Origin: Phallusia mammillata
Taxonomy: Eukaryota
DNA length: 64,000 nt
Direction: 5' to 3'
NCBI GenBank assembly: GCA_965637545.1
Contig: OZ281498.1
Location: 2,046,001 to 2,110,000, forward strand
The notes beneath the pieces are model-generated. The model saw only the letters and a program-made list of their open reading frames with translations. It was not told the origin of the DNA and ran no database searches. The translations under genes and the position numbers were made by a program. Positions 39,701 through 60,259 of the stretch are shown here, one piece after another; within the stretch, counting starts at the first letter, position 1, and every line of letters begins with the position of its first letter.

Positions 39701-42700
39701 TGGTATCTGTAATCTTAATGGGTAGTTTGTTCCATACCTTGGCACATTTGTATCTAAGTGTATGTTGGCCGCGACTTGTGGAAACACTTGGGACAAAAAA
39801 GTGTTGTTTTAAAGCGCCTCTTGTTGCATGCTTATGTATGGACGATGTGTAGGTGAAGAAGTCATCAAAAACTGGCGGTAATGTTACGTCAATGTTCTCT
39901 ATTATAACGCGACTAACAAATGCTACAGAAGCCGCTAAGGTCATTTTCGACTCGGAGAACAAATTTATCACTGCATATTTGCCACCATCCCGCTGTTAGA
40001 ACCATCGAATGTGATTACCAAGCTCGTAAGATATTAAAGAGCAAATATCAATGATCGCATTCCACAATACCTTCAGTTGCTAATTGTTACGTCATAATGG
40101 CAATAACAATGAAAACAGCGATGTTAGTATTAATTTAAACCAATTTAACTACTAATCAAACTTGCACGTCGACATTAACTTCAGGTCACGACAAGGTCAT
40201 ATTACGTAACAATCGTTTAACGCGAGATTCCATGCCGCCATTATTAAGTAGTAAGTGAATATGGTGGCGTGTGTTACGAGCCAAGCGGCTTTTATCATTA
40301 AACTCAGACATAAAATATTAAACGCGGTGCTCAATTAAAATATCACATGGTGGCGCAACTCCTGTGTTGCCATGCCAACGCGATGTGGCACTAAATACTA
40401 AGTTATTTGCGGCAAATCTCGGTTGCCATGCAACGATAACGTCAGTAGCTACCGAAAAGTATTTATTTTACGTTATTCCAAGTGGAATAAATGACTTGTC
40501 AAAGCGGTTTTCGGGCATTGAAATGAAACAAACGACTTGCAGCCGGGTTTGCTAACAACAACAAACCATATTAGCGTGGCCGACTTCGAGTAACGTGAAA
40601 ATGAGGTTGTTTAGATATAATATTTTTGGGTTTGAGCTTCCATTTTAGGACTACAAGAGTAGTAAAGTACACGCATGTGATAAATCGACATTTTGTGAGT
40701 TTAACGTCGTTAGTTGGTCCAACATTGTTCAAAATGAATGATCAATTTGCAGGAAGAAGAATTCAATCAATTTTGGAAAAAGCAATTCCAGCCTTTTCTA
40801 TTTAAGGAACTGGAAACGAAATCCATTGGAACATTTAAGGCTAATAATTATCAAGTCGTGCTCGCAAAGTTCGACGCAAAAATCATTACTAGTCGGGAGT
40901 TTTGGTAATTAGCGCTTTGCAATGTTGCGCAAGCTCAAATAACCGACGATAAGAAGTAATTTACCGATTCCTATCATTGATCTTGGCTGAAAACGAAAAC
41001 AGCGAAAAAACGATTACCTGTGGACTAGCACTAGCAGTACCAAGTACGTCGGCTTATAAACTATAAAAATGTAACTGAAATTTTTAGATTGTCGCAAATA
41101 ACACACTGATAAAATTATGATAGCGTAAATAGCAATTTTTCTGCGCCCGCGGCAAGCACATGATTTTCAAGATATTTTTAACAACTGACTGTTGTTATAC
41201 CGAAAAAATGCCAGGGACCTCGTGTATAGTGAATGCATTAGATTACAGCCGTTTAAAAAAACTGACACTTTTCTTTGTTGATGTACACAGTCACCATTGA
41301 AACGTATGAAATAATTGCAAAATACATTGTTATTATTATAAGGGCAACTATAAACGCATCGAGGCAATACATGGTAAACAAGATGCAGACAGGTTGTCAA
41401 CTGTGCTTGATACGATTTCAAAAGAATAACAGATAGCTCTCAAATATTTTATGTTACAAGGAACTTGCTTACTATTAATGCACGCCTTTTCCAACTATAA
41501 GCCTCACCAGTGCAGCTAGTGACAAGGCATTGGCTATATAAGCACATACGGTCAATGTCTTGTCACCAGCTGCACTGGTGAGACCTTACGGGTCGAAACA
41601 GTGTGCACTGATAGTAAATATACTCCCTTAAACATAAAATCTTTATTTACTTGTTGTACTTTTCAAGTCAATGTTGATTTGGTTTCTCTTAAATAAGGTT
41701 TATTAAGTCTAGAGTACAAACACCGAGTATTTTTGACCGCAAAAATACTTTACAAGCAAAAGTCGAAAAAATCTTTTCGGTTTTGATCGTTTGATCGATT
41801 TATTTTGAAATATTAGCAATAATCAATTCTCACCATTTCTAGTCGCTTTAGCAATGGACGATTGCGAGATGTGACGTTCACTGATGAACTTCCTGATGTC
41901 TTCCTTCACCGAGGCTTGATCTCTCCTGAACAGTTCATCCAACTCTTCACTGATGTCAACCTTCTCCCCGTCAATCTCCACAACTGTGCTCCCGTTCCCG
42001 CCAGAAGTCGCGGTGGCGCGCAACATGCCTATGACGTCACAATCAGGTAAATCACACGTCACAAAGAAAAGACGCTTTGGTAGATAGTTTTCTTAGGTTT
42101 TAAGACACATAAGTTTTAAAAATACGGTATAGAATAAATAAGAAAATAAAGTAGTCTCACTAGAAACGAAATTACCTATGCCTATAAAGTCGAATAAAAC
42201 TGCTCATCTCATCGTTTCGACAAAAAATCCCAGTATCAGCGAAACATCGCTAGTCAAGTCACATAACGCGTTTTAACATAATGCGTGACAGAAAGTTGTA
42301 AGCTGAATTTCATTTTACAGACAATAAAATTGAATAAGACTTCATTCTTGCACAGTTTATGTATGTGTATATTTTTTTTAAAGTTTATGTATATTTTTTA
42401 ATTTTTAATAATTTAATTTCATCAAAGTAAGATGCATGTTCAGTTTCTTATTTAAACAGAACTATATTTTATCGGCAATCATGTTCCTAATTCAACTAGT
42501 TTTTCAGCCGTTTCACAAATATAGCAGGATTTAATAAACTCCTTACCTCTGTTGTTGAGAAGCGCAGGGTAGTGAGGGACAGTCCCGTGAGCGAAACCGT
42601 TTTGCAGCAGGCTGGCGGCGGTCGCCACGGCAACGGCTTGTGACGTGTTGGGCCACTGAGCGACGGGAGGCAGCAATGAAAGCTGGTTCGGGTTCTGAAC

Positions 42701-45405
42701 GAGAAAAGGTATTTCCGTTGTCAAATATATGTTTTTTATAGACACCAAAAGCAAAGTTGTTTACAATAGATGCTGAGTTTATTTTGCTCGGTGAAAGAAC
42801 TCGCGACACAATTACACCCATCAAGTTTATAGAGCTCTTCTGGCAATTGTATTTTTATTCCGACGTTTCGACGTCTTATACAGGTCGTCTTCATCAGGGT
42901 AAATAACACTGAATGTGTGTAGTACAGTGCACGATAAACAAAGCAGCACAATATACGCTAAAAGTGTAGTTTTAGGCCAACGACTTCATTGCGAAATTAA
43001 TTTGCACCACAACAATATCAAGTTTTGTCTGACCTGTAGGTGAGTCCCGAACATGAGAGGGTTAGCCTGGCCGATGTGATGTGGAAGGCTGGTGTTTAAT
43101 TTCACCTGCAAAGAAAGGAACGAATCATCACAAATTCATGAGTTGGTAACTTGAGCGCTCAACAGACGGCGCGCGGGCTTCGATAGCTACGCGAAATTAT
43201 AAATGAGGGGAAATTGACATTTTGGCCCCAAATAAATAATATACCTCGCATTAATAAGTTGATGGGATAAGAACGTGGAGGGATAAACATAAGCTTTAAT
43301 GTAAATGTTGCTTTTTAAATTAATTTATTTTGCGAATTTACTTTACAATAAGGGAATTTGTACGCTTTACTGCCTTATTACGGGAATGGTGAATTTAAAA
43401 TATAATCTACAAAGTTATGCTTTATGCTATTTATGTATTTTGTGCATAGGTTTAATCCGAACCAAGCTATGAGCAATTCCAGGAAGTTGAAACAGCAACC
43501 AGGCAACCAATATTTCATCCAATCACAAAGCAGCAGCTAATTACTGATTTTTCTTATCGCTAAGTGATTCATATGTGAATAGTAAGGTCATCAAAATATA
43601 GGTATTCTATTTAGAACAATAGACGCCTTGTGACGCATAACTGGGCATTGTTGCTGGTTTCAGGATCGGTTATACCGTCACAAAAAGGAACAGTTTTAAA
43701 AGTCGGTTGCCAAACTGTAAAATTAATTTAATCATTGTTCAAGAAATACTTAACACAAAAACGGGCATTATCATTCGTTTTAAAAACACCAGACCTAGTT
43801 GCAGTGTACCTTGAACAAATTACAAAACTGCCAGGGAATTCGTGTATAGTGAATACTGTATATGTTATTGCAAACTTTTTTAGCAATCTAAAAGCATCGC
43901 AACAAACTGGCGTGTTGTTATATGGCTACACTAGCCAATGCGACCTATGCCTTATCACCAGCTGCACTGGTTATAGGTCGAAACAGTGTGCACTGTCTGC
44001 AGCTTTCAGTATTAGTTTCTGTACAGTTAAAAACATGGCGACATTAACCAGGCATAATGTACAACATTTTTTTAGCTATTCCAGCAGTCTTAAACAACAA
44101 TGTCGGCGCGCGAAGACATAACGAAATTGCCAACTAATACTTTATACACTGTATTCTGTATCAGATATTCTTACATGATGTGGTGGAGACTGGGGGCTGA
44201 TGCTTCTCCTCTGATACTCGGCAGATTCTTTGACGTGGTTTACCGTCGACCCCATTTGTGCACCCCCGTTCGTCGTAGGGGCATTCCCGTTGCTGCTGGA
44301 TGGGGAGGTCCCGTTTACGATTCCGCTCAGGTTGGAGACGACGCTGCAAGACAAACGAATAAATCAATTGTACGTCATAAAGGTTTTATGACATGTGATT
44401 ATTTGACCCGGTAAACGTGTTTAAAAAAACTCTGACAGTGGTCGTTTGGGAGAAATTAAGAAATATGTTCAAAAAGTATTAGAGAAAAGATAAAGCAAAA
44501 TATTTGCATATATCCCACATTTTTTTGAAGTGGGTTTCTCCGGGAATATTATAAGTTTCACGTGATGATGGGTTATATTCAAACTAATAGGGTTGAAAAA
44601 TCGGAATCGGTTTTGGTAGTTATGCCAGAAGCAAAAGCATGAGTTGAACTGAGCCCATTCGGCGTATTCATGAGATAATGCGATTTACACGCTAAAGCTA
44701 AAGCTGTTATTGAGTATTATTAACTTGAACAAATAGACGGTGTTAGTTGCTTGAAGCAAATGTTGTTGAATTTGACAAAACTGCCTGCAGCATATCTACG
44801 TACGCGGTGAATCTGTTGTGGTGAGAATGCGTTACCCTGTGGCCTTAAACCGAAATAAAGGATTTTTCTACTTTCTAAAAGAGACTACGCCATTGTCGAA
44901 ACAATTTAAATTGAAAAAGCAATTGAATGAAACATAACAAAAACAACAACAAAGATTTCTAATTAGGCGCCCATTTGCTTTGTATGCGTTTATCAGTAGT
45001 CATATCGAATCGTCCTTATTTTTTGAAGCAAACTTGAAGTTCTTTATGGATTTTAACCCGAATAATCCAGTTTTTAACTGGTTTAAGCCGCTTTTGCCTA
45101 CTACCGATCTATCAAAACACTTTATTTTTTTTTTAAAGTCAAAACAAACAAAAGATGCGCCGTTTTAAATTTCGGTTTACAAGGCCAGTAAGAAAACTCT
45201 TATTGTGTAAAAATTTCTGCTACCTTGTTCCAGGGCTTCCAAGACCAGCATCGTCCAGTTTTTCAATCTCTTCCAGACCTCGTATGATTTGGTCTTTGGT
45301 CAGCCCGCTCTGTTTAAGTTTCTGCAGCAGCATGATCTGACTGACCGTGAACTTTGGTGTCTCCTGATCGTCCATGTTCGAACGTGTTGATTTATTGTCG
45401 TGCAT
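21762..45405 (-). CDS. HMBOX1: Homeobox-containing protein 1 (HNF class), about 563 aa, 11 coding exons
   Basis: Exons 45405-45224, 44343-44175, 43105-43034, 42694-42547, 42028-41834, 38109-37987, 29173-29080, 27769-27642, 23962-23867, 22668-22538, 22115-21762; phase-matched (1692 nt). Contains the N-terminal FTVSQIMLLQKLKQSGLTKDQII motif, a POU-like domain (KEDIRKFISERHISQSSIAKATRNAISQSYISQWL), an atypical homeodomain (RFTWPKECLSILENYY...SDLDKVTTVKVYNWFANRRK) and the HMBOX1-type LALEMAAVNHSILAL motif. Confidence 0.95.
22205..22383. mobile_element. hAT-type MITE, 179 bp (family also at 56059-56237 and 59944-60108)
   Basis: TIR CAGTGGTG(G)GATT / AATCTCACCACTG; flanks CGTATAAC / CGTACAGC; internal AACCGG/CCGGTT motifs. 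Confidence 0.88.
30725..30899. mobile_element. hAT-type MITE, 175 bp
   Basis: Ends CAGTGTTTTTTTTAAGG / CCTTAAAACAAAACCTG; flanks CTTCTAGG / CTTGTAGG (7 of 8 match). Confidence 0.75.
34982..35337. mobile_element. hAT-type MITE, 356 bp, with poly-C run
   Basis: Ends CAGTGGTTCTTA / TGAGAACCAATG; partially matching flanks CACTAGTC / CACTGGAA. Confidence 0.75.
36652..37407. mobile_element. Non-autonomous hAT (Buster/Charlie-type) element, 756 bp
   Basis: TIR CAGGTGTTCCCAACCT / AGGTTGGGAACCCCTG; exact TSD ATTTATAG; subterminal GTGGTACG repeats. Confidence 0.93.
39160..39890 (-). mobile_element. 5'-truncated non-LTR retrotransposon (CR1/L2-group) 3' end
   Basis: LPPVFDDFFTYTSSIHKHATRG...FVPSVSTSRGQHTLRYKCAKVWNKLPIKI...FKRNLRFFLIATYS* (stop 39639) is a typical CR1/L2-group ORF2 C-terminus. 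It is followed by about 450 nt of 3' UTR, a terminal stem-loop (GGGTCAGCT...GGCCACTAGTGGCT..AGCTGATCC) and a (TAAA/TGAA)n tail. Confidence 0.88.
41479..41607. mobile_element. Palindromic Penelope-like remnant carrying hammerhead-like motifs in inverted orientation
   Basis: 30-bp inverted arms at 41503-41532 and 41553-41582. Plus strand TGCA-CTGGTGA-GACC-ttacg-GGTC-GAAAC-A-GTG-TGCA at 41571-41607; a decayed mirror copy lies on the minus strand. Confidence 0.7.
42855..42908 (-). ncRNA. Minimal type I hammerhead ribozyme within a Penelope-like pLTR remnant (about 42770-42950)
   Basis: Minus strand reads TTATT(TA)CC-CTGATGA-A-GACG-acctgtataaga-CGTC-GAAAC-GTC-GGAATAA: intact core, 4-bp stem II, palindromic ACGT stem III, GUC cleavage triplet and stem I. 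Confidence 0.85.
43936..43996 (+). mobile_element. Second, partly deleted copy of the 41479-41607 family
   Basis: TCACCAGCTGCACTGGT..AGGTCGAAACAGTGTGCACTG; the upstream GCCAGGGA..TCGTGTATAGTGAAT is also shared (41210 and 43830). Confidence 0.7.
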
Positions 45406-48400: not shown

Positions 48401-51400
48401 CTAGGCGTTTTCTCTTTTAAACTATGTGTGCCGGGATATTTATCATGAAAAGTTATTAATAAATTAATATGTGCTATTCAAGGAAAATTCAAGGGTTTGA
48501 TGAGCAAAATTTTCCTGAAGTTTTTTTGGGCAACTTTTGCCGCAGGCAGTATGGACTTATCACCCCTAGTTTATCAGCATGGCATTCCATTAAAGATTGC
48601 TGTGCGGTTAGTGTTGCAGATAACTTTGTGCTAAAAGGGAATGGCGGTTGTCAACACTTTTTCGTCTATAACCGTTTCTAAACCTTTGTTTCATTTTAAT
48701 AAATTATTTGCAAATATCTTCCCTATTTTCCAGCGAATTACGGAAAATTATTCCAACACTGAAATTAGTACGGCGTTGGGTTTCCATTGTATTTTTGCTC
48801 ATGCTAATTTGTTTATTTTGTGATCAACACGAACGGTTTCTCTCCACATGATGATATTCTATGACGCAACAATAAGATCGAAAATACGGGGTTAGAATGT
48901 GTTTTGCATCGAAAGCTTTTAAAAAATTTACAGAAAATACCTACTAATAAGTTCCGCTTAAAGAATTACAACAAACAATCGATTTCGCAAACAAATATTT
49001 TACAAATTTGCACCAAGATATAACATAAGATATATTCTAAAGCAGAAAATCTATTTCACAATTTAATGTAAAACTCCACAAATATTTTCAAGTCAAAATT
49101 ATTTTATCAGTTAGGCTGAATTTTGGCTAAATTTAACTTCAAAATCAAATCACTTCCCTAAAAGCGAACAAGACTCGACAATCTTTGATTCTAAAATGAC
49201 AAGGGCGGATAAAAATCGGCGGTGATCGCTTTATCTGCCGAGCTCAACTGCAAATGGGCGGTGACAACAATTGCGCGTTCCAATATAAAGACAGACGCTA
49301 AGCGCAGCAAATTCTGCATCAAGGTATAGATCACTGATCGCAAAAAATGCCTAGGTGAATTATTTATCGAGCACAGGCGTGAAACGATGTCTCTTCTCTA
49401 ATGATGTTAACAACCTTCAAGCAAACCGATCGCCTTTTGCATGTCATCAGACGTAAACTCTTTTTTCTCATAAAATTGCAGTAAATATATCTCGGACAAA
49501 AATATTCGTGCGCGAAACTGCGAATCCAATTCACTTTTTTCTTCACGTCGAAATCGCAGCAAGAAAACAAGCGAGAGAAAAAAGAAAAAGGGCGCGTGTG
49601 AAACGAGAGAGTTTGTGAAGGTGAAATAATCCATACAGCACCTTTACGAGTGGTGGTAGAGCTTAGCGTTCCACACTGCGTTCCTTGCAAATGTTATTAT
49701 TGTAATACATTATTAAACGTTCGTGGGGCTTACGTCATGCCAGATGGAAAAGTGAGGCCTTAGTTAAGCCCGTACCTTACGCGTCAGCCGCATATTGCTA
49801 GACTCATCAAATAGTTATCCAATATCTCTTTTGTTTTTCTTTCGCCTAGTTTATCTTTCTCACTCGGCGGCAAGCTGTTCCGTGAAACCTACAGTGTCAA
49901 AAAGCGAAGGAAAATAATTTCCAGTTGGTGCGATTACAAACCGCTCCAGTTCTAACGTTGAGCAGCTATTTCCAGCTTTAACAAAAATGTCGTTCAACTG
50001 GTGTTAATGTTAAACAAAAATACTAGTTGTTTCTATCCATAACTTGTTTAACATTACACCAGTTGAACGACATTTTTGTTAAATATGCAACCTGGTGGAC
50101 GAAAACGCCTGTACAGCATTTTCTATTTCCAGCTTGGAAATTACATTTGTAAAACTGCGCCTAACAGTTTCTTTAAAACGCATGTACTCGATCTAAATTT
50201 GAACACACAGTACGAATTCTACATATCTTTAAACATTGCAGAAACATTAAAAATGTCGCCAAAAAGATGTAAATTTTGATGTAGATAAGGACAAGCACCA
50301 TTAATAGCGAAATTATGCTATTTTGATCAGAAAGCCTTAAACTACCAAAACAGTTTTTTGTCACCAAAGGGAATTTCTTTTACTTATTTAAATAGAATCT
50401 CAAGTATTACGCTTTCCAAATACTTCCTACTACTTACATTGTATGTAAATATAACCAATTTGTTAACAGGACTTTAGGAGAAACGCTCGCTTAAGAGCTT
50501 AGAATTTAATTGCCATTTATCGCTAAAAAAGTCTTGTGAAAAAAGAACTTTTTTTACGAAACATTTGCAACTTTGATTAAACTGACTAATTCTTGTAGCG
50601 AAAGCAAGTTACTTTTGAAAAACAAATTCGCGTTTCTAAATTTGACGCAAATTTTAGAAAAAGGGGCCACGGTCGCAATTAAGAGACACGATTGATTTTC
50701 AAAGCAAAGATAAAAGTAAACGATTGATTTGTGCCCAACAATTATCACCACAAAATGTAATACTATTTTATTTGTCTATATTTCAAAAAATTACATGTAC
50801 ATATCGTGTACAAATATTTTTATTGTTGAGTCCGCTGTCATTTATCTTAAACCAAACGTAGTTAGTGGTGGCATAAAATTGCGCTCAAAATAAAAATTTC
50901 GGTTTATAAAACAATGAAAAAGATCAAGCCACCAAAACACGAATGCGCAGGGCAATTTTTTCGATTGCAAACAGCTGTTTACGTCGTCGAGGACGTACAA
51001 TTACAAGCACTTGACCGTTAACTCAACTACAATCACAAATTAAACCTAAATCCGGGAATTTTGAGGCAAAATTCAACTCAACGCGTCACAACATGTAAGC
51101 GAAGAGCCCTGGAGCGGTTTAAACATACCAAGTGTAAAAGTATTTTCATGTTAATATACAACAAGGCGGTTGCAGAAGCGATTTCGGGTCAAGGCTAACG
51201 AAAACATTTGGAAGTTACGTCATCGAATCAATTACCCCGTGGATTAACGTCGTTAGTGGAAAGTTCCAATCGAAGGTTTTAGAATGACTTATTTATCAAC
51301 CCGATTGATTTGGTGACGTAACTATATGCTTTGTTCGTAATAAAACAGACAGCAGTATGGCTTTGTAAAAATTAGTAACTTACAATTCAATGATTTTTTT

Positions 51401-52736
51401 AGATTTTTCTAGCCTACGCCTTGCCATATGATAATGCTTGGTGACCGGCTGATTCGGTATAGCGCCTTCAAAGTGATTTATATATGAGTGTGCCACGATC
51501 GCTGGTCTAAATAAACGCTTCAGGGCTGATCCCAGTTGTGCATTTATGTTTATTATAACAAGTATTCATTGATTGCATCATATTTATATTGTAAAACAAC
51601 ACGTTTGTTTGTAGATTTGCGATTCCTGGTTAATGGTAGCAGAATGCAGCGCTGATCGACATAAAGAAAACGTATTGTACAAATAATTAATTTATTCTAG
51701 GACAGGGATATTTGGGTGTAATAAAATTCTTTTGAGGAGATTTGCAGGTATTTTATTCAGTGTTTGGAGTTTGCACGTTGGCTAACCCAGAATTGCATCA
51801 TACAAATCAATACGTGAATGGCGATATACGTAGATAAAACTGTAAAAACATTACAGAAAAAACTGCACCATTACGTAAAACTTCATGAAACAACCAAATA
51901 TTAATAGTAACCAATTTTGCTGGGCGGAAACCGATAATAGTTATTGAATCTGGCAAATTGACGATGTTGCGTTTTCGATTGGAATTTACGGTGATTTTTC
52001 TTGCACGATTTTTCGCGGAACTTGGTCACGATTATGTTTTCGAAATGTTGGCGGCGCAATTATTGTACGGAAAGTACCAAATTCGTCGGTTAAACCGTAT
52101 ACTGTGTCGTTTCAATATTAAGACGGCAATATTTTAGCTTTTTGTTTGTCACAATTGCCTTTTTTGCCACTTTTTCTGTTTCGTTCTTTTTCACACAAAA
52201 TAATAATTATTACCGTCATATACTTTTTGCGTTGCTAGTTTAACCGATTTGGTCCATTTAACGAATTAAGTTGTATCATAATTAGGCAGAAAAACTGCAT
52301 TACATGTCGTTAGCTACAATCAATTCCGAAATTTTTTTAGTGAAACTAATTTAGGTTGTATCTCAAAAATTGGGTTGATCTAAACTGATGTTTTGGAAGC
52401 GAATCTCCAAAAAACATTAGGTTAGTTTAGAAAAATATTTAAATCGCAGTGTAAAAATCAATGCAAACTTCTTGACAATGATAACTGCATCAAAAAATTG
52501 CAATTTCGGAGGGTGGCTCCAATGAGGTAGGTACACATTTTAAACTTGTGAATCATTTTTATCACAAGACCTCATGTTCTGCTGAGCAATTTTACCAGAC
52601 ACAATAAAACCTCAGGACAGTTTGCTGTTTTATGGAACGTATTCAAGTTATTAATGCTCAGTCTTTATAAATAAGCTGTTGCTGCCAGGCATAATGTATT
52701 TGCAATTATTGCTCGCCCAGTAGATTTTTATTGTAA

Positions 52737-52782
52737 ATTAACCGACGTTTCGACGTTCCATAGGATTATTTTACAGTCAAAA
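52737..52782 (-). mobile_element. Degenerate copy of the 42855 hammerhead/pLTR motif
   Basis: Shares ACGTCGAAACGTCGG; the CUGAUGA core is decayed to CTGTAAA. Confidence 0.5.
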
Positions 52783-55700
52783 CATGCTTAAAGAATAGTA
52801 ACCCAGTCTATATGAAGGTTAATAAACACTGGCGGTGCTAAAGTATTGATTTGGCGGAAAACCGGTTGATTATTTATTTACACTAATATGGGAGAGGTCA
52901 TAAAATAATTTAATTTGACAAGGTGCCGTCTATCACACATTAGCACGACACTGTTAAAAATTAACTCGTTAACAAAGACGTTTACGACCCGTATTTGCGC
53001 TACTGACTCAAGACGCATAAAAGCATGTTTGAAACAGTGTTGGTGAGCAAAACTAAACTGAATATCAACTCTTAAAAACACAATCTCGACCAATTTTTTT
53101 AGTGAACGTAAAATTGAACTCTTTCTAATCGCAATAAAAACCAAGACATAAAATGTCAATAGTACAATAACACGCATATTTAACATATTTAACCAAACAA
53201 AATAAAGTCCCTTACATTATTTTATTTTCGATTCCTACACACAAAATACTGTTACATCTCCCACAAAAATAAAATAAACAAACAAAGCAGTATTATCATT
53301 ATTTTTGTATCATTGTAACAGCCAATATCCTTTGGTAGTAGCCCACATCTTAATAAAATATACGGAAAATACATTTATCGACAAGTCCACATGAGTTTAA
53401 AACAGTGCAATTGCGCCGCAACCGTTTAAGTAGCACAAAATGAACACAGAGTCGAATATATTGAAACATGTTCTATATATTGATTAGTTTTCCACGACCG
53501 GCGGCGATTGGCCAGAAACTCCCTGCAACTTTTAAGACAAACTGTCATATTTCGGTTGGAACGTCACTTTAAAGCCAAAAATAATCGTGGACAGAAAAGA
53601 GAGTATTTGAACTGAACAGTGACAGAAAAGTAACGTTTTGTGGTACTTCTAATAAGAAACAATTGAAGTTGCTTTACATAAATGTTGTTGTCTTAAGTAT
53701 ACAACAGTCAAACAGGTTTTGGCCCAGAAAGTCTGTGTTTAGAACTAAAACTAATGTTTCCTGTTTTATCAAAAAACAATATTGTCATCTGACTAGAACA
53801 TTGTCCACAAATCCCTGCCTGGCAATGTCGCCTAAAGTTTATCTAGCAAACCTTTCTTTTTTGTCTGCTTTTATTCTTTAGTTCCTCTTCGGGTTAAATA
53901 GTTTCTGTTTACGTTGGCGTGTAGCAGATACGCTGCTAGATAGATTCGTTGTTTCTCAACTAAGTGCCGTTTTCTGACCAATTTCCTAAACCACACGCGT
54001 TATCAAGTTGTTCTGTTTGTTTGTGAAAAGCTAGCGCAACTTAAAAAGTTACACTATTGAACACATTTTAACTAAATTACGTAAAGCCGAATCGATAGCT
54101 GTCCACAAAGCATCGTAACAACATAACGCCGGTTCAAATATTCGATTGCTGCACTCATCTTTCAAGCAAACAAAAGCGAAGTAACTACCAGACATACCTC
54201 AGATCAGCCAACGCTATCGTTCGTAGCATATCAACGCAATTATTTCACAAACACGAAATCCCAACAGGTTTATAAAGCAAAGTACAAAGAATCAATACAC
54301 AGGGACAGACAATAGCTTGTATGGGTTTAAATAGCTTGCCACAACTAAATCTTATTCATTGTCGCTTGACAAAGCGTTTAAATGACCTTTGGCGACACCA
54401 CAGCCTTTGCCTCCGTAACGACTTGCGTTTTACAATAGCAGTTCGGATACGAAAACAGGCGTAAGTCACTAAGTAAAGCACGACATGGCATGCCCCGTAA
54501 GCTTCTTTGATATCGAATAGCACAAGTTATTGAATATATGGCTTTAACATGGGAATTAAACAATAGCCTGGAAGCAATATGAGTGCATGGAACTTGATAC
54601 GAGACGAAAGAACGTGTATAGTTAACACAGAACATAATATACGCTTGATTCTTCCAAAGATGTTCGGGTATTGCCACAAAGTGTTGTTGTTGCAATAACG
54701 TCTACTGTTACACGTCAATAGCAATTATTATGTCCTGAATTGATTGTCAGGGATATTACTTTTCCTGTCATAATCTGGTATACTATGCTGACAATGGTTG
54801 TTTGTGACACAACAAAATACGGACAACTGGTTCCTAGTATGCTTGTTAGTTGACTTATTTCCAATTGTTTTACAAATCCAAATATTTCCACAGAAAATTA
54901 ATTAACAAAAGTTAAAATCAAAGTAATATGTTTCAAACAATGTTTATGATTTTTAGAAAATCCACATTTAAAAATGTACTATAAGCATAAAGTACTATAA
55001 TAAATATTTGATTTAGTACAAATATGATCAAATATTTGAATTTTGCAATCAGTTTTATTCACACAATTTAATGAAATACCAGCAATTTTTGGTAAATTCC
55101 TTCAAACTGATAATGAAAAGAGACCTAAACAGCTGCAAAACTATTAAATATAGTTAAATAGTGAATACAATGCCATAAGAATACATCAGTTTGCTGGAAT
55201 ACAGCTTAGACAAGTTACAATTTTATTATCATAACCAAATTTCAACAAACAGTTTGTCATAAAGGATTGAAAGTATTTTTTTTAAACTAACAACTTGAGA
55301 TTTTGCAAAATAATTTTGGCTTTACTTTAGTGGTTTAACAGTTGATTTAGAATTTTGCTGTAAATGCAAAAATGTACAGACCTAAACAATTATATTGAAT
55401 TTTGACAAACAAAAAACATCATTTGTGTATTAGGCATGTTTTATAGGAGCAAAAATCTAATGAGTGCAATTTTCGAAAAGCTTTAACCAAAATAAGAAAT
55501 TTATTTCAATGCAAATACCTCGCCTCAAAACAGAACAATATATGTATGTACACAATAAGTGCACATTAAAAGGGTAGTAAAAAATGCAATCCACAAATGT
55601 AAGGTCTAATTTGAAGCAAGTCTTGCATTTTAACAAACCAATGCACAACAATGACCTCAGCAAAGTATCTAAAATAAACAGACACGCCATTCGGCTGCAA

Positions 55701-57461: not shown

Positions 57462-60259
57462 ATGAGTTCGTCCGAGGAAGTGTCATGGATCTCTTGGTTT
57501 TGTGGGCTACGAGGGAATGAGTTCTTTTGCGAAGTAGATGAAGATTATATACAGGATAAATTTAATCTAACAGGTCTGGGTGAACAAGTACCGCATTACA
57601 GGTAAATTTGTTAATGTTGTTTCTTGATGCACTTCACGATAAGCGATGAAATATTGTCATAAAGTATATTCACTGATCTGTAGTATATTTTTTGTGTGTG
57701 TATGTGCTAAAGTGACTTATATATTAAGCCTTAAAACTTCTAAATGAATGGTAAAATGGCTGCATTTATTTATGCAAAAAGTCCAATCAGTTTGTGTTGA
57801 ATGGAGTTTACAACAAATTTAGCTTGTTTGTGAATTTTTGCTGTCAAAATTTTTACCTTACATTTTTCAAAAACAAGTATTTGTTTGTTTTATTTCGACT
57901 AACATTCCTAAAGGAACAAACAAACAACAGAATATTGTGTCACAGAAAAACAATTGTAAATGTCACAATAAAAATCTTGTTTTTTTTGTATTTCAGCAAA
58001 ACTATTTATTACTTTTATATTTCATATTTATAATTCATCAAAACTAAGTAGTGTTTTTTTGCCATTGGTTTGTTTTGATGCAACGGATAAATAACTTAAG
58101 CAATGGCCAAGATCTATGAAGCAATAAGGAAACCCTTCAATTGACAACCAGTAATTCAATTGTATGTAAATATGCCATCATGTCATGTGTTGTATGTTTT
58201 GTTAGCTGTGCATTTTTTGTCTTTTTTTCACACCACATATTAAGAGCTTGGGTTAGCCAAAACCTCACATACATTTTAAAACACTACAACCAAAAGCGCG
58301 GAGTTTTTAGCAAATCAGTGTTCAATCTACATGTAATAAACTTTTAGCATGTTCATACTTATTTGGTAACCATGTGTTTCGGGAAAGCAAAGTCATACTG
58401 TATTCACATTTATTTGGTGTTGATACAGTAGAGTGGGGCTACATATAATGTAAAAATATGCAAGTTTTTTACCCACCATGATTTTAAATAATTACATAAA
58501 ATTCATGTATCTGTTTTAATTGTTTCATCCAGACAAGCACTTGACATGATACTGGACTTAGAACCTGATGATGACATTGAAGATAATACAAATCAGTCAG
58601 ACTTAATTGAACAAGCTGCTGAGATGTTGTATGGATTAATCCATGCTAGATATTGTCTCACAAACAGAGGAATTGCTCAAATGGTACTTGGCAACAGGTT
58701 TCTGTTTGCTCAACGTTGATCTGTATGAAATTTAAATCAAAACCAATTAAATTATGAAAGTGGTAATCCTGTAAGGTGAACTTATTTGGTATATTATGCT
58801 TTAAACAGGACACTAATGTAGATAAACTGTAGCAGCCAAGCACAGCGTATTAACAAATTTGTACCTCTTCCAGCAATGTTTTACGTGTGTTTCAATGGCC
58901 TTGTTGCTTAATAACAACTTTGTGTCTTCAATTTATGTCATTACCCTGATGAAGGTATCTCATATGGGACATCAATGGCATATTATAATAAAAACTGCTG
59001 GAAGAGCTACAAATTTGTTAATAGGACACTAACATAATTTAATACTAAAGGCACCTTTTTGGAAGTCAAGTCCAGGAACTGTTATCATTAGTCAATCTTA
59101 TTTGTCACTGTGCTGAAATCTGATGTAAATAGGTTTATGTGCACAGTGCCTGGCCCTGGGGCATATCAATGAAATCACTTCCATCTAATAATCACATTCA
59201 CATCATAACATGATGCATATGTAACTTGCTTTTTTCACAGCTTGAAAAATACCAGCAGGGTGAATTTGGGCATTGTTCACGAGTTTATTGCGAAAATCAG
59301 CCAATGCTGCCGATAGGTGAGTTTATAAACTTAAGTTTTACCCAGTTCACTGTTGTATTAAAATGCCTAGTACTGTGCATGCATGTAGTTCTGTTTTTTG
59401 TATATCTCTTAAAAAAAAATTGAGTCACTTCTTTAACTTATTCATGTTGAATTCTAATACACATAACTTACAGTTAGAAAGTTTTTACCCTATTTGATCC
59501 CTAAATAGCCAAATTCGATTTGCTTTAAGGGCATATCTTCCCAGAGGTAATTGAAACAAGAATTTGTGTCACAAACAGAACAAGTAACATAAGCATAGTA
59601 AACTTTGAAATTTACCTACAAATTTTCAAATACTTTCAGGGCTCTCAGATGTCCCTGGTGAAGCAATGGTGAAATTATATTGCCCCAAGTGTCAGGACGT
59701 CTACACACCAAAGTCGTCACGACATCATCATACTGATGGAGCCTATTTTGGCACCGGCTTTCCGCATATGCTCTTTATGGTGCATCCAGAATATCGGCCA
59801 AAGAAACCAACCAACCAGTTTGTACCACGGTAAGCATTACCATGGTTACAACAAAATATATCCTCAAAATTTGTTTTCCAAAAAATAACCATTATTGCTG
59901 CCAAGCCATCTTAAGGCATGTTTGTATGTTAAAAATGTCTAGTATCCAGCCGGTTCGCACCGGTCCTATAGAACCGTCTCACAACATTTTATGAGATCAG
60001 CAAACCGGTTAGCATTACTGGTTACTGTATATGACTTTTTGTAACAGAACCGGCTCGAAAAATATGACTTTTGTGATAGAACCGCTTGACAAAAAAATCC
60101 CACCACTGCTTACATGGTGCTGTTTTACTGTGGTAATGAATAATAATTTGTGTTTCAATATTTTTCAGCCTGTTTGGGTTCAAAATCCACCCGATGGCAT
60201 ACCAGCTCCAGTACCAGGCTTCACAGAAAATGAAAAACCCATCTAAGCTCCGCCACTGA
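57462..60259 (+). CDS. CSNK2B: Casein kinase II regulatory subunit beta, 215 aa, 5 coding exons
   Basis: Exons 57462-57601, 58533-58683, 59241-59316, 59640-59829, 60169-60259 (648 nt). Reads [39 protein letters not shown]..., with zinc-ribbon cysteines in [10 protein letters not shown] and YCPKCQD, and [17 protein letters not shown]. Confidence 0.98.
59944..60108. mobile_element. Copy of the 22205-22383 MITE family in the last CSNK2B intron
   Basis: CAGCCGGTTCGCACCGG...AATATGACTTTTGTGATAG...AATCCCACCACTG. Confidence 0.88.

What the first reader, a model, noticed from the sequence alone, without database searches (positions are those of the whole stretch)
42855..42908. Intact hammerhead ribozyme on the sense strand of HMBOX1 intron 3
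Seen: the full catalytic core, with predicted cleavage between 42862 and 42861, about 165 nt upstream of the exon 4 acceptor and immediately followed by AATAAA. Known: Penelope-like elements encode minimal type I HHRs whose palindromic stem III (here ACGT, zero loop) favours cleavage as a dimer. An extra A after A9, as here, also occurs in the CChMVd(+) hammerhead. Inference: every HMBOX1 pre-mRNA carries a potentially self-cleaving site that could affect splicing or yield truncated RNAs lacking both DNA-binding domains; as a lone monomer it may be slow.
Basis: partly seen in the sequence, partly recalled or inferred. Interest (0 to 1): 0.7.

Follow-up and report, generated by a model that had tools for sequence, protein, structure and literature searches.

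The report
Penelope retrotransposon hammerhead remnant in intron
The hammerhead ribozyme motif is real, but it is one of about 1,700 such motifs left across this sea-squirt genome by Penelope-like jumping genes; this lone, truncated copy is predicted to be inactive, and the host gene's mRNA is spliced normally.

Summary
Observation confirmed. On the minus strand, 42909-42849 carries every conserved hammerhead core base. It also has the extra A after A9, a G10.1-C11.1 pair, a zero-loop ACGU stem III and C17 at 42862.

It is not a gene-specific element. It lies in a 124-nt, 5'-truncated 3'-end fragment (42820-42943) of an abundant Penelope-like retroelement (PLE: reverse transcriptase plus C-terminal GIY-YIG endonuclease). 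The genome holds 277 exact copies of this family's 36-nt hammerhead and 1,708 motifs of the same architecture, against 0 and 1 in reversed-pattern controls. At least three diverged PLE lineages carry the motif just after their ORF, with compensatory changes in stems I and II. This is the minimal PLE hammerhead of Cervera & de la Pena 2014, who saw no detectable cleavage from a single motif.

Here the monomer's predicted best fold (-14.7 kcal/mol) pairs CUGAUG with CGUCGG. The catalytic fold scores -6.9 kcal/mol. No second intact copy lies in the window. RNA contigs from two studies join 42694 to 43034 exactly, so the 339-nt host intron is removed normally.

RNA ends could not be mapped because only contigs were served. 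The scan has 55 earlier notes on hammerhead and Penelope elements, those shown all from this genome. Ordinary; low interest.

The parts
42820..42943 (-). 124-nt 5'-truncated 3'-end fragment of a Penelope-like element (family A), without the optional tail
   Evidence: It is 94-96% identical to many genomic copies. It aligns to the region that begins about 75 nt after the ORF stop of the full copy L033.
42849..42909 (-). Minimal type I hammerhead motif with its stem I. Stem I 5' strand 42909-42898; core 42897-42891; extra A 42890; stem II 42889-42870; GAA 42869-42867; ACGU 42866-42863; C17 42862; stem I 3' strand 42861-42849
   Evidence: Sequence read. Folds. Covariation across PLE families.
42861..42862 (-). 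Predicted scissile bond (after C17 = 42862)
   Evidence: Position follows from the hammerhead numbering applied. No RNA end data were available (served contigs only).
42876..42876 (-). A in place of the family-majority G; it loses one distal stem II pair
   Evidence: Alignments.
42854..42859 (-). AAUAAA hexamer, which is part of the 3' strand of stem I in the whole family
   Evidence: The hexamer occurs 98 + 84 times in the window.
42695..43033 (-). 339-nt host intron (GT..AG on the minus strand) that contains the fragment
   Evidence: Joint 42694 to 43034 in RNA contigs of runs X10 and X12.
42546..42694 (-). Downstream exon of the HNF1/HMBOX1-type gene
   Evidence: RNA contigs; ORF.
43034..43103 (-). 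Upstream 70-nt exon
   Evidence: RNA contigs.

Best explanation
The motif is the minimal hammerhead that Penelope-like retroelements (PLEs) carry just downstream of their RT/GIY-YIG ORF. A copy of PLE family A inserted in sense orientation into a short intron of an HNF1/HMBOX1-type gene. Only its last 124 nt remain: it is 5'-truncated and has no tail.

Within the element, the hammerhead is thought to help process multimeric transcripts, either as a dimer through the palindromic ACGU or with help from the element's protein. That role is inferred from the literature and was not shown here.

In this intron the motif is a lone monomer without a stem III. It is predicted to fold into a rod in which CUGAUG pairs with CGUCGG. 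It is therefore most likely catalytically silent and is removed with the intron. It is a neutral passenger, not a regulator of the host gene.
For: - Repeat family: more than 2,278 first-look candidates, best copies 94-96% identical.
- Longer copies run 5' into an ORF with RT motifs and a GIY-YIG motif (GVVYSIPC...YIGETGRS). The hammerhead starts about 115 nt after the ORF stop. Pfam gives RVT_1 and a weak GIY-YIG hit on intact ORFs.
- PLE hallmarks are present: a head-to-head inverted 5'-truncated partner (1,583-nt arms); an optional 27-29-nt tail; and 2.6-kb tandem units with the hammerhead in the spacer between ORFs.
- The same motif occurs in PLE lineages whose RTs are 63-64% and 41-45% identical to family A. 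The core, the extra A and GAAACGU are invariant, and stems I and II show compensatory changes.
- Covariation: 80.5% of cells paired against 24-45% when partners are slid, and 6 of 11 pairs change on both sides.
- Genome counts: 277 exact copies and 1,708 generic motifs, against 0 and 1 in controls.
- Fold: monomer best fold -14.7 kcal/mol is the inactive pairing; the hammerhead-competent fold is -6.9 kcal/mol.
- No other intact motif lies in the 64-kb window.
- Spliced mRNA contigs from two studies remove the intron exactly.
- Literature: the min-HHR architecture is described, single motifs showed no detectable cleavage and dimers cleaved weakly (PMC4209133). A PLE hammerhead is protein-assisted and dispensable for insertion in vitro (PMC11167929).
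Against: - All runs were served as assembled contigs, so RNA 5' and 3' ends at 42862/42861 could not be examined.
- Contigs show that the spliced form exists, not what fraction of transcripts is cut.
- Fold energies are predictions. PLE protein or abundant PLE RNAs in trans might activate the motif.
- Family A looks recently active, with copies 98% identical and long open frames, so such factors could be present in cells.
- Hammerhead-bearing retrozymes are reported depleted from introns in frogs (bioRxiv 10.64898/2026.07.22.740005). That is compatible with some cost of genic copies.
Confidence: 0.85

Rival explanations
1. One reading: the intronic hammerhead cleaves the host pre-mRNA often enough to lower splicing or to yield truncated RNAs. 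It might do so as a trans-dimer with PLE transcripts or with help from PLE protein.
For: All core bases are intact and the motif is in sense. The family is present in RNA contigs at high depth. A PLE hammerhead was shown to be protein-assisted (PMC11167929). Retrozymes are under-represented in frog introns (bioRxiv 10.64898/2026.07.22.740005).
Against: There is no stem III, and the inactive fold is favoured by about 8 kcal/mol. A distal stem II pair is lost (42876). A trans-dimer would rest on only 4 intermolecular bp. Single min-HHRs are inactive in vitro (PMC4209133). Normal spliced mRNA is seen in two studies. About 1,700 similar motifs exist genome-wide, so nothing marks this copy out. From my own knowledge, not checked here: Dye, Gromak and Proudfoot (2006) reported that a ribozyme cut inside an intron need not block splicing.
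Confidence: 0.07
2. The insertion matters through its AAUAAA rather than through catalysis, by causing premature intronic polyadenylation or exonisation.
For: AAUAAA lies in sense at 42859-42854.
Against: The hexamer is very common in this AT-rich window (98 + 84 occurrences). No RNA contig ends in or bridges from the unique intron flank into the fragment. The intron is only 339 nt long and is spliced.
Confidence: 0.04
3. A chance match to the hammerhead consensus with no biological origin.
For: Loose CUGANGA...GAAA matches occur 8 times in the window. Rfam gives no hit.
Against: The motif belongs to a repeat family tied to PLE ORFs. It shows covariation across lineages and a 1,708 to 1 excess over the control.
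Confidence: 0.01

Closest known systems
Minimal hammerheads (min-HHR) of metazoan Penelope-like elements (Cervera & de la Pena 2014, PMC4209133)
   Same: Type I topology. An unpaired base between A9 and G10.1. A conserved G10.1-C11.1 pair. A long helix II (7-8 bp in the family). A short, bulged helix I. No helix III hairpin, with palindromic 15.x-16.x positions. Location in the PLE terminal repeat. Most genomic copies are single truncated motifs, and some are close pairs on opposite strands.
   Different: The host is a tunicate, which that paper's main text does not mention. This copy has one lost distal stem II pair.
Ultraconserved intronic hammerheads of amniotes (Rfam HH9 and HH10; de la Pena & Garcia-Robles 2010, cited in PMC4209133)
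   Same: A sense-strand hammerhead inside an intron of a protein-coding gene.
   Different: From my own knowledge, those have a stable helix III and loop-loop contacts, are single-locus and are conserved across species. This one is a young repeat copy without helix III. It has no Rfam hit, and its conservation across species could not be tested.
Animal non-LTR retrozymes (tandem hammerhead repeats giving circular RNAs; PMC5680766; bioRxiv 10.64898/2026.07.22.740005)
   Same: Hammerhead-bearing non-coding repeats linked to PLEs. A 282-nt tandem family of this kind exists in this genome, with a decayed copy at 43900-44005 of the window.
   Different: The finding is not a tandem unit. It is a fragment of the autonomous element's own 3' end.
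CChMVd(+) hammerhead with an extra A after A9 (De la Pena & Flores 2001, cited in PMC4209133)
   Same: An extra unpaired base at the 5' end of stem II.
   Different: That is a viroid ribozyme with a full helix III. It resembles this motif only at that one position.

Membership tests
Hammerhead ribozyme (catalytic core) | C3 U4 G5 A6 N7 G8 A9, G12 A13 A14, an A15.1-U16.1 pair, and H17 that is not G | tested here: met
   CUGAUGA, GAA, A...U and C17 are all present. These positions are invariant across 20 distinct copies.
Hammerhead ribozyme (catalytic core) | Self-cleavage at H17 | not testable with these tools
   Only contigs were served, so no RNA ends could be read and no bench assay was possible.
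Hammerhead ribozyme (catalytic core) | Three helices around the core, supported by covariation | tested here: inconclusive
   Stems I and II are supported: 6 of 11 pairs change on both sides, and 80.5% of cells pair against 24-45% when slid. Stem III exists only as a 4-nt palindrome and cannot form within a monomer.
Rfam Hammerhead families (RF00163, RF00008, RF02275-7) | Score at or above the gathering threshold | tested here: not met
   No hit at the gathering threshold or at E<=10. This is probably because there is no helix III hairpin for the models to score.
PLE min-HHR (Cervera & de la Pena 2014) | An unpaired base between A9 and G10.1, a G10.1-C11.1 pair, and palindromic 15.2-16.2 without a loop 3 | tested here: met
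   The search pattern fixed G10.1, C11.1 and the extra A, so their invariance in alignment A1 is partly by construction. One search used a looser pattern and gave the same result.
PLE min-HHR (Cervera & de la Pena 2014) | Located in the terminal repeat or 3' region of a PLE | tested here: met
   About 115 nt after the ORF stop in family A. In the 210-nt spacer between tandem ORFs in family B.
Penelope-like element (the parent repeat) | A single ORF with RT followed by a C-terminal GIY-YIG endonuclease | tested here: met
   RT and GIY-YIG motifs are visible in translation. Pfam gives RVT_1 at E 2e-7 to 1e-4 and GIY-YIG at E 0.008; only the family B RVT_1 hit (31.5 bits) clears Pfam's cutoff, the others fall below it. 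Similarity to telomerase RT was not tested.
Penelope-like element (the parent repeat) | Partial tandems (pLTRs), an inverted 5'-truncated partner, and an optional 30-40-bp tail | tested here: met
   2.6-kb tandems. Inverted arms of 1,583 nt. A 27-29-nt tail present in some copies only. These features are as described in PMC8557442 and PMC11167929.

The most novel reading that the evidence does not exclude
The lone intronic min-HHR is activated in vivo by PLE-encoded protein, or by pairing with abundant PLE transcripts. On that reading, bursts of PLE expression would cut the pre-mRNAs of this and hundreds of other genes that carry sense copies, coupling transposon activity to host gene output.
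Probability: 0.04. Interest if true: 0.6.

Novelty: new member of a known kind. Interest (0 to 1): 0.15.

Why it matters
It matters little for the host gene. The finding is one ordinary remnant of a well-described class, the Penelope-type minimal hammerheads.

It does have some use as annotation. This tunicate genome holds at least three PLE lineages, and the three examined all carry the minimal hammerhead, with about 1,700 intact motifs in total. It also holds a 282-nt tandem retrozyme-like family. Rfam does not detect the minimal hammerhead examined here, which suggests that standard annotation would miss this class.

Tried and rejected
- Rfam at the gathering threshold and at E<=10 gave no hammerhead hit. 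This is uninformative for a motif without helix III.
I re-sent them in the allowed form.
- I hoped to map RNA ends at the cut site, but all 24 runs are kept as contigs only. The single read-laying run could show splicing and presence, not ends.
- A PDB sequence search with a PLE ORF found nothing.
- I found no convincing target-site duplication around 42820-42943. The only candidate is a non-adjacent ATTGTG on both sides.
- I did not test conservation in other species, because no relatives of this genome are served.
- I sent no exon letters to external similarity searches.
- The N run in L033 was left as X.

Full report
**What is there.** Read on the minus strand, window 42909-42849 has the layout of a type I hammerhead.
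- Stem I 5' strand at 42909-42898, then CUGAUGA at 42897-42891 and an extra A at 42890.
- Stem II, GACG (42889-42886) pairing with CGUC (42873-42870), with one further distal pair.
- GAA at 42869-42867, the palindrome ACGU at 42866-42863, and C17 at 42862.
- Stem I 3' strand at 42861-42849.

Rfam gives no hammerhead hit at the gathering threshold or at E<=10. This is probably because the motif has no helix III hairpin for the Rfam models to score.

**It is a piece of a repeat.**
- A 211-nt query around the motif found more than 2,278 first-look candidates in the 240-Mb genome. The best copies are 94-96% identical over exactly 42820-42943.
- Most other copies extend further on both sides, so the window copy is truncated.
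- Walking 5' from longer copies led to a full copy, L033. It has a 940-codon open frame that contains an assembly gap, which I left as X. The frame shows RT motifs and, at its C-terminus, GVVYSIPC...YIGETGRS...KEH, a GIY-YIG endonuclease motif.
- The hammerhead starts about 115 nt after the ORF stop, and the element ends about 50 nt after the cut site.
- Some copies carry a further 27-29-nt 'tail', ATAC(AT)TATGCCTGGCAGCAATAGCTTAT.
- L033 has a head-to-head inverted, 5'-truncated partner with 1,583-nt arms that are 99% complementary.
- A related family forms 2.6-kb direct tandems with the hammerhead in the 210-nt spacer between ORFs.
- Pfam gives RVT_1 and a weak GIY-YIG hit on intact ORFs.

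These are the hallmarks of Penelope-like elements as described in PMC8557442 and PMC11167929.

**The motif is a conserved PLE feature, not chance.**
- An RT query found at least four identity classes relative to family A: 88-100%, 63-64%, 55% and 41-45% amino-acid identity.
- The A, B and D lineages all carry CUGA(U/A)GA-A-G...C-GAAACGU(C/U) after the ORF. Their stems differ in a compensatory way: GACGACC/GGACGUC, GGCGUCU/GGACGUC, GGUGUUUC/GGGACAUC, GUCC/GGAC and GCCC/GGGC. Stem I is CC/GG, UC/GA or CU/AG.
- On 20 distinct copies (alignment A1), 80.5% of cells pair, against 24-45% when partners are slid.
- Six of 11 pairs change on both sides. The covariation score is 0.367, against 0.10 or less for the slid controls.
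- Genome-wide there are 277 exact copies of the family A 36-mer and 1,708 matches to CTGANGAAG-N16-20-CGAAACGT. The reversed controls give 0 and 1.

**Comparison with the literature.** Cervera & de la Pena 2014 (PMC4209133) describe this architecture in metazoan PLE terminal repeats.
- It has an unpaired base between A9 and G10.1, a conserved G10.1-C11.1 pair, a long helix II, a short helix I, no helix III, and palindromic 15.2-16.2 positions.
- Most genomic copies are single truncated motifs, and some are pairs on opposite strands. I see the same pairs here.
- They report that a single motif gave no detectable self-cleavage and that dimers or trimers cleaved weakly.
- A later study found a PLE hammerhead to be protein-assisted and dispensable for insertion in vitro. 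It found no RNA-seq reads ending at the cut site (PMC11167929).

**Will this copy cut?** Three points argue against it.
- The monomer's predicted best fold (-14.7 kcal/mol, 39% of the ensemble) pairs CUGAUG with CGUCGG and buries both halves of the core. A hammerhead-competent fold with stems I and II scores -6.9 kcal/mol.
- The window copy also carries a G->A at 42876 that removes one distal stem II pair.
- No second intact motif lies in the 64-kb window. The other PLE fragments there have lost part of the core.

**Host gene.**
- Minus-strand ORFs at 45405-45220, 42062-41823 and 38239-37841 hit Pfam HNF-1_N. This fits an HNF1/HMBOX1-type gene. I did not test orthology further.
- RNA contigs of about 1.9 kb from two studies (X10, X12) lie on 44345-44173, 43103-43034, 42694-42546 and 42027-41834, with exact joints.
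- The hammerhead fragment therefore occupies 124 nt of a 339-nt GT..AG intron (42695-43033). It lies 90 nt from the donor and 125 nt from the acceptor.
- That intron is removed precisely in the assembled mRNA.
- A DNA contig from another study (X4 record 24, 42901-43388) has its own SNPs and a 6-nt deletion and bridges the repeat/unique junction. So the insertion is not private to the assembled individual.

**Limits.**
- All runs were contigs, so RNA ends, strand and levels could not be read.
- Summed word depth over the fragment is about 8,500 times that of the flanks in two DNA runs. The tool warns that this is not a copy number.

**Verdict.** It is an ordinary, truncated passenger copy with no sign of affecting the host gene. 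The scan holds 55 earlier notes on hammerhead and Penelope elements, and the eight it showed are all from this genome.

Noticed in passing
window 43900-44005 (+), in the next intron upstream (43104-44172): A decayed copy (about 83% identity) of a second very abundant hammerhead repeat. Other copies read ...GCUGCA-CUGAUGAG-ACC...GGUC-GAAAC-AGUGUGCACUGUC-UGCAGC, which is a canonical type I hammerhead with a real helix III. The window copy lacks about 7 nt of the CUGAUGA box. The family forms 282-nt tandem arrays (for example G000:C3:1385510, 1385792 and 1386074), so it looks like a retrozyme.
   Followed up: partly
window 52665-52790 (-): A 3'-end fragment of a family B-like PLE. It starts inside stem II, so there is no CUGAUGA box, and it ends with the tail ATACATTATGCCTGGCAGCAACAGCTTAT. 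PLE families A and B share nearly the same tail.
   Followed up: partly
window 58873-59023 (+): A family B2-like PLE 3' fragment whose hammerhead has a 5-nt deletion in GAAACG, so it is dead.
   Followed up: partly
window 49977-50126: A head-to-head inverted pair of short family D-like PLE 3' ends that lack the hammerhead.
   Followed up: no
L033 (G000:C6:10930300-10937400): The family A copy has an in-frame TGA inside the GIY-YIG motif (NTR*KEH) in both inverted arms. It also has a 300-nt exact direct repeat flanking an N gap, which probably reflects an assembly problem within the element.
   Followed up: no
G000:C1:2661782-2698189: Three identical head-to-head hammerhead pairs, each with about 140-nt spacing, recur every 18.1 kb or so. 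This looks like a segmental tandem duplication that carries the PLE scars.
   Followed up: no
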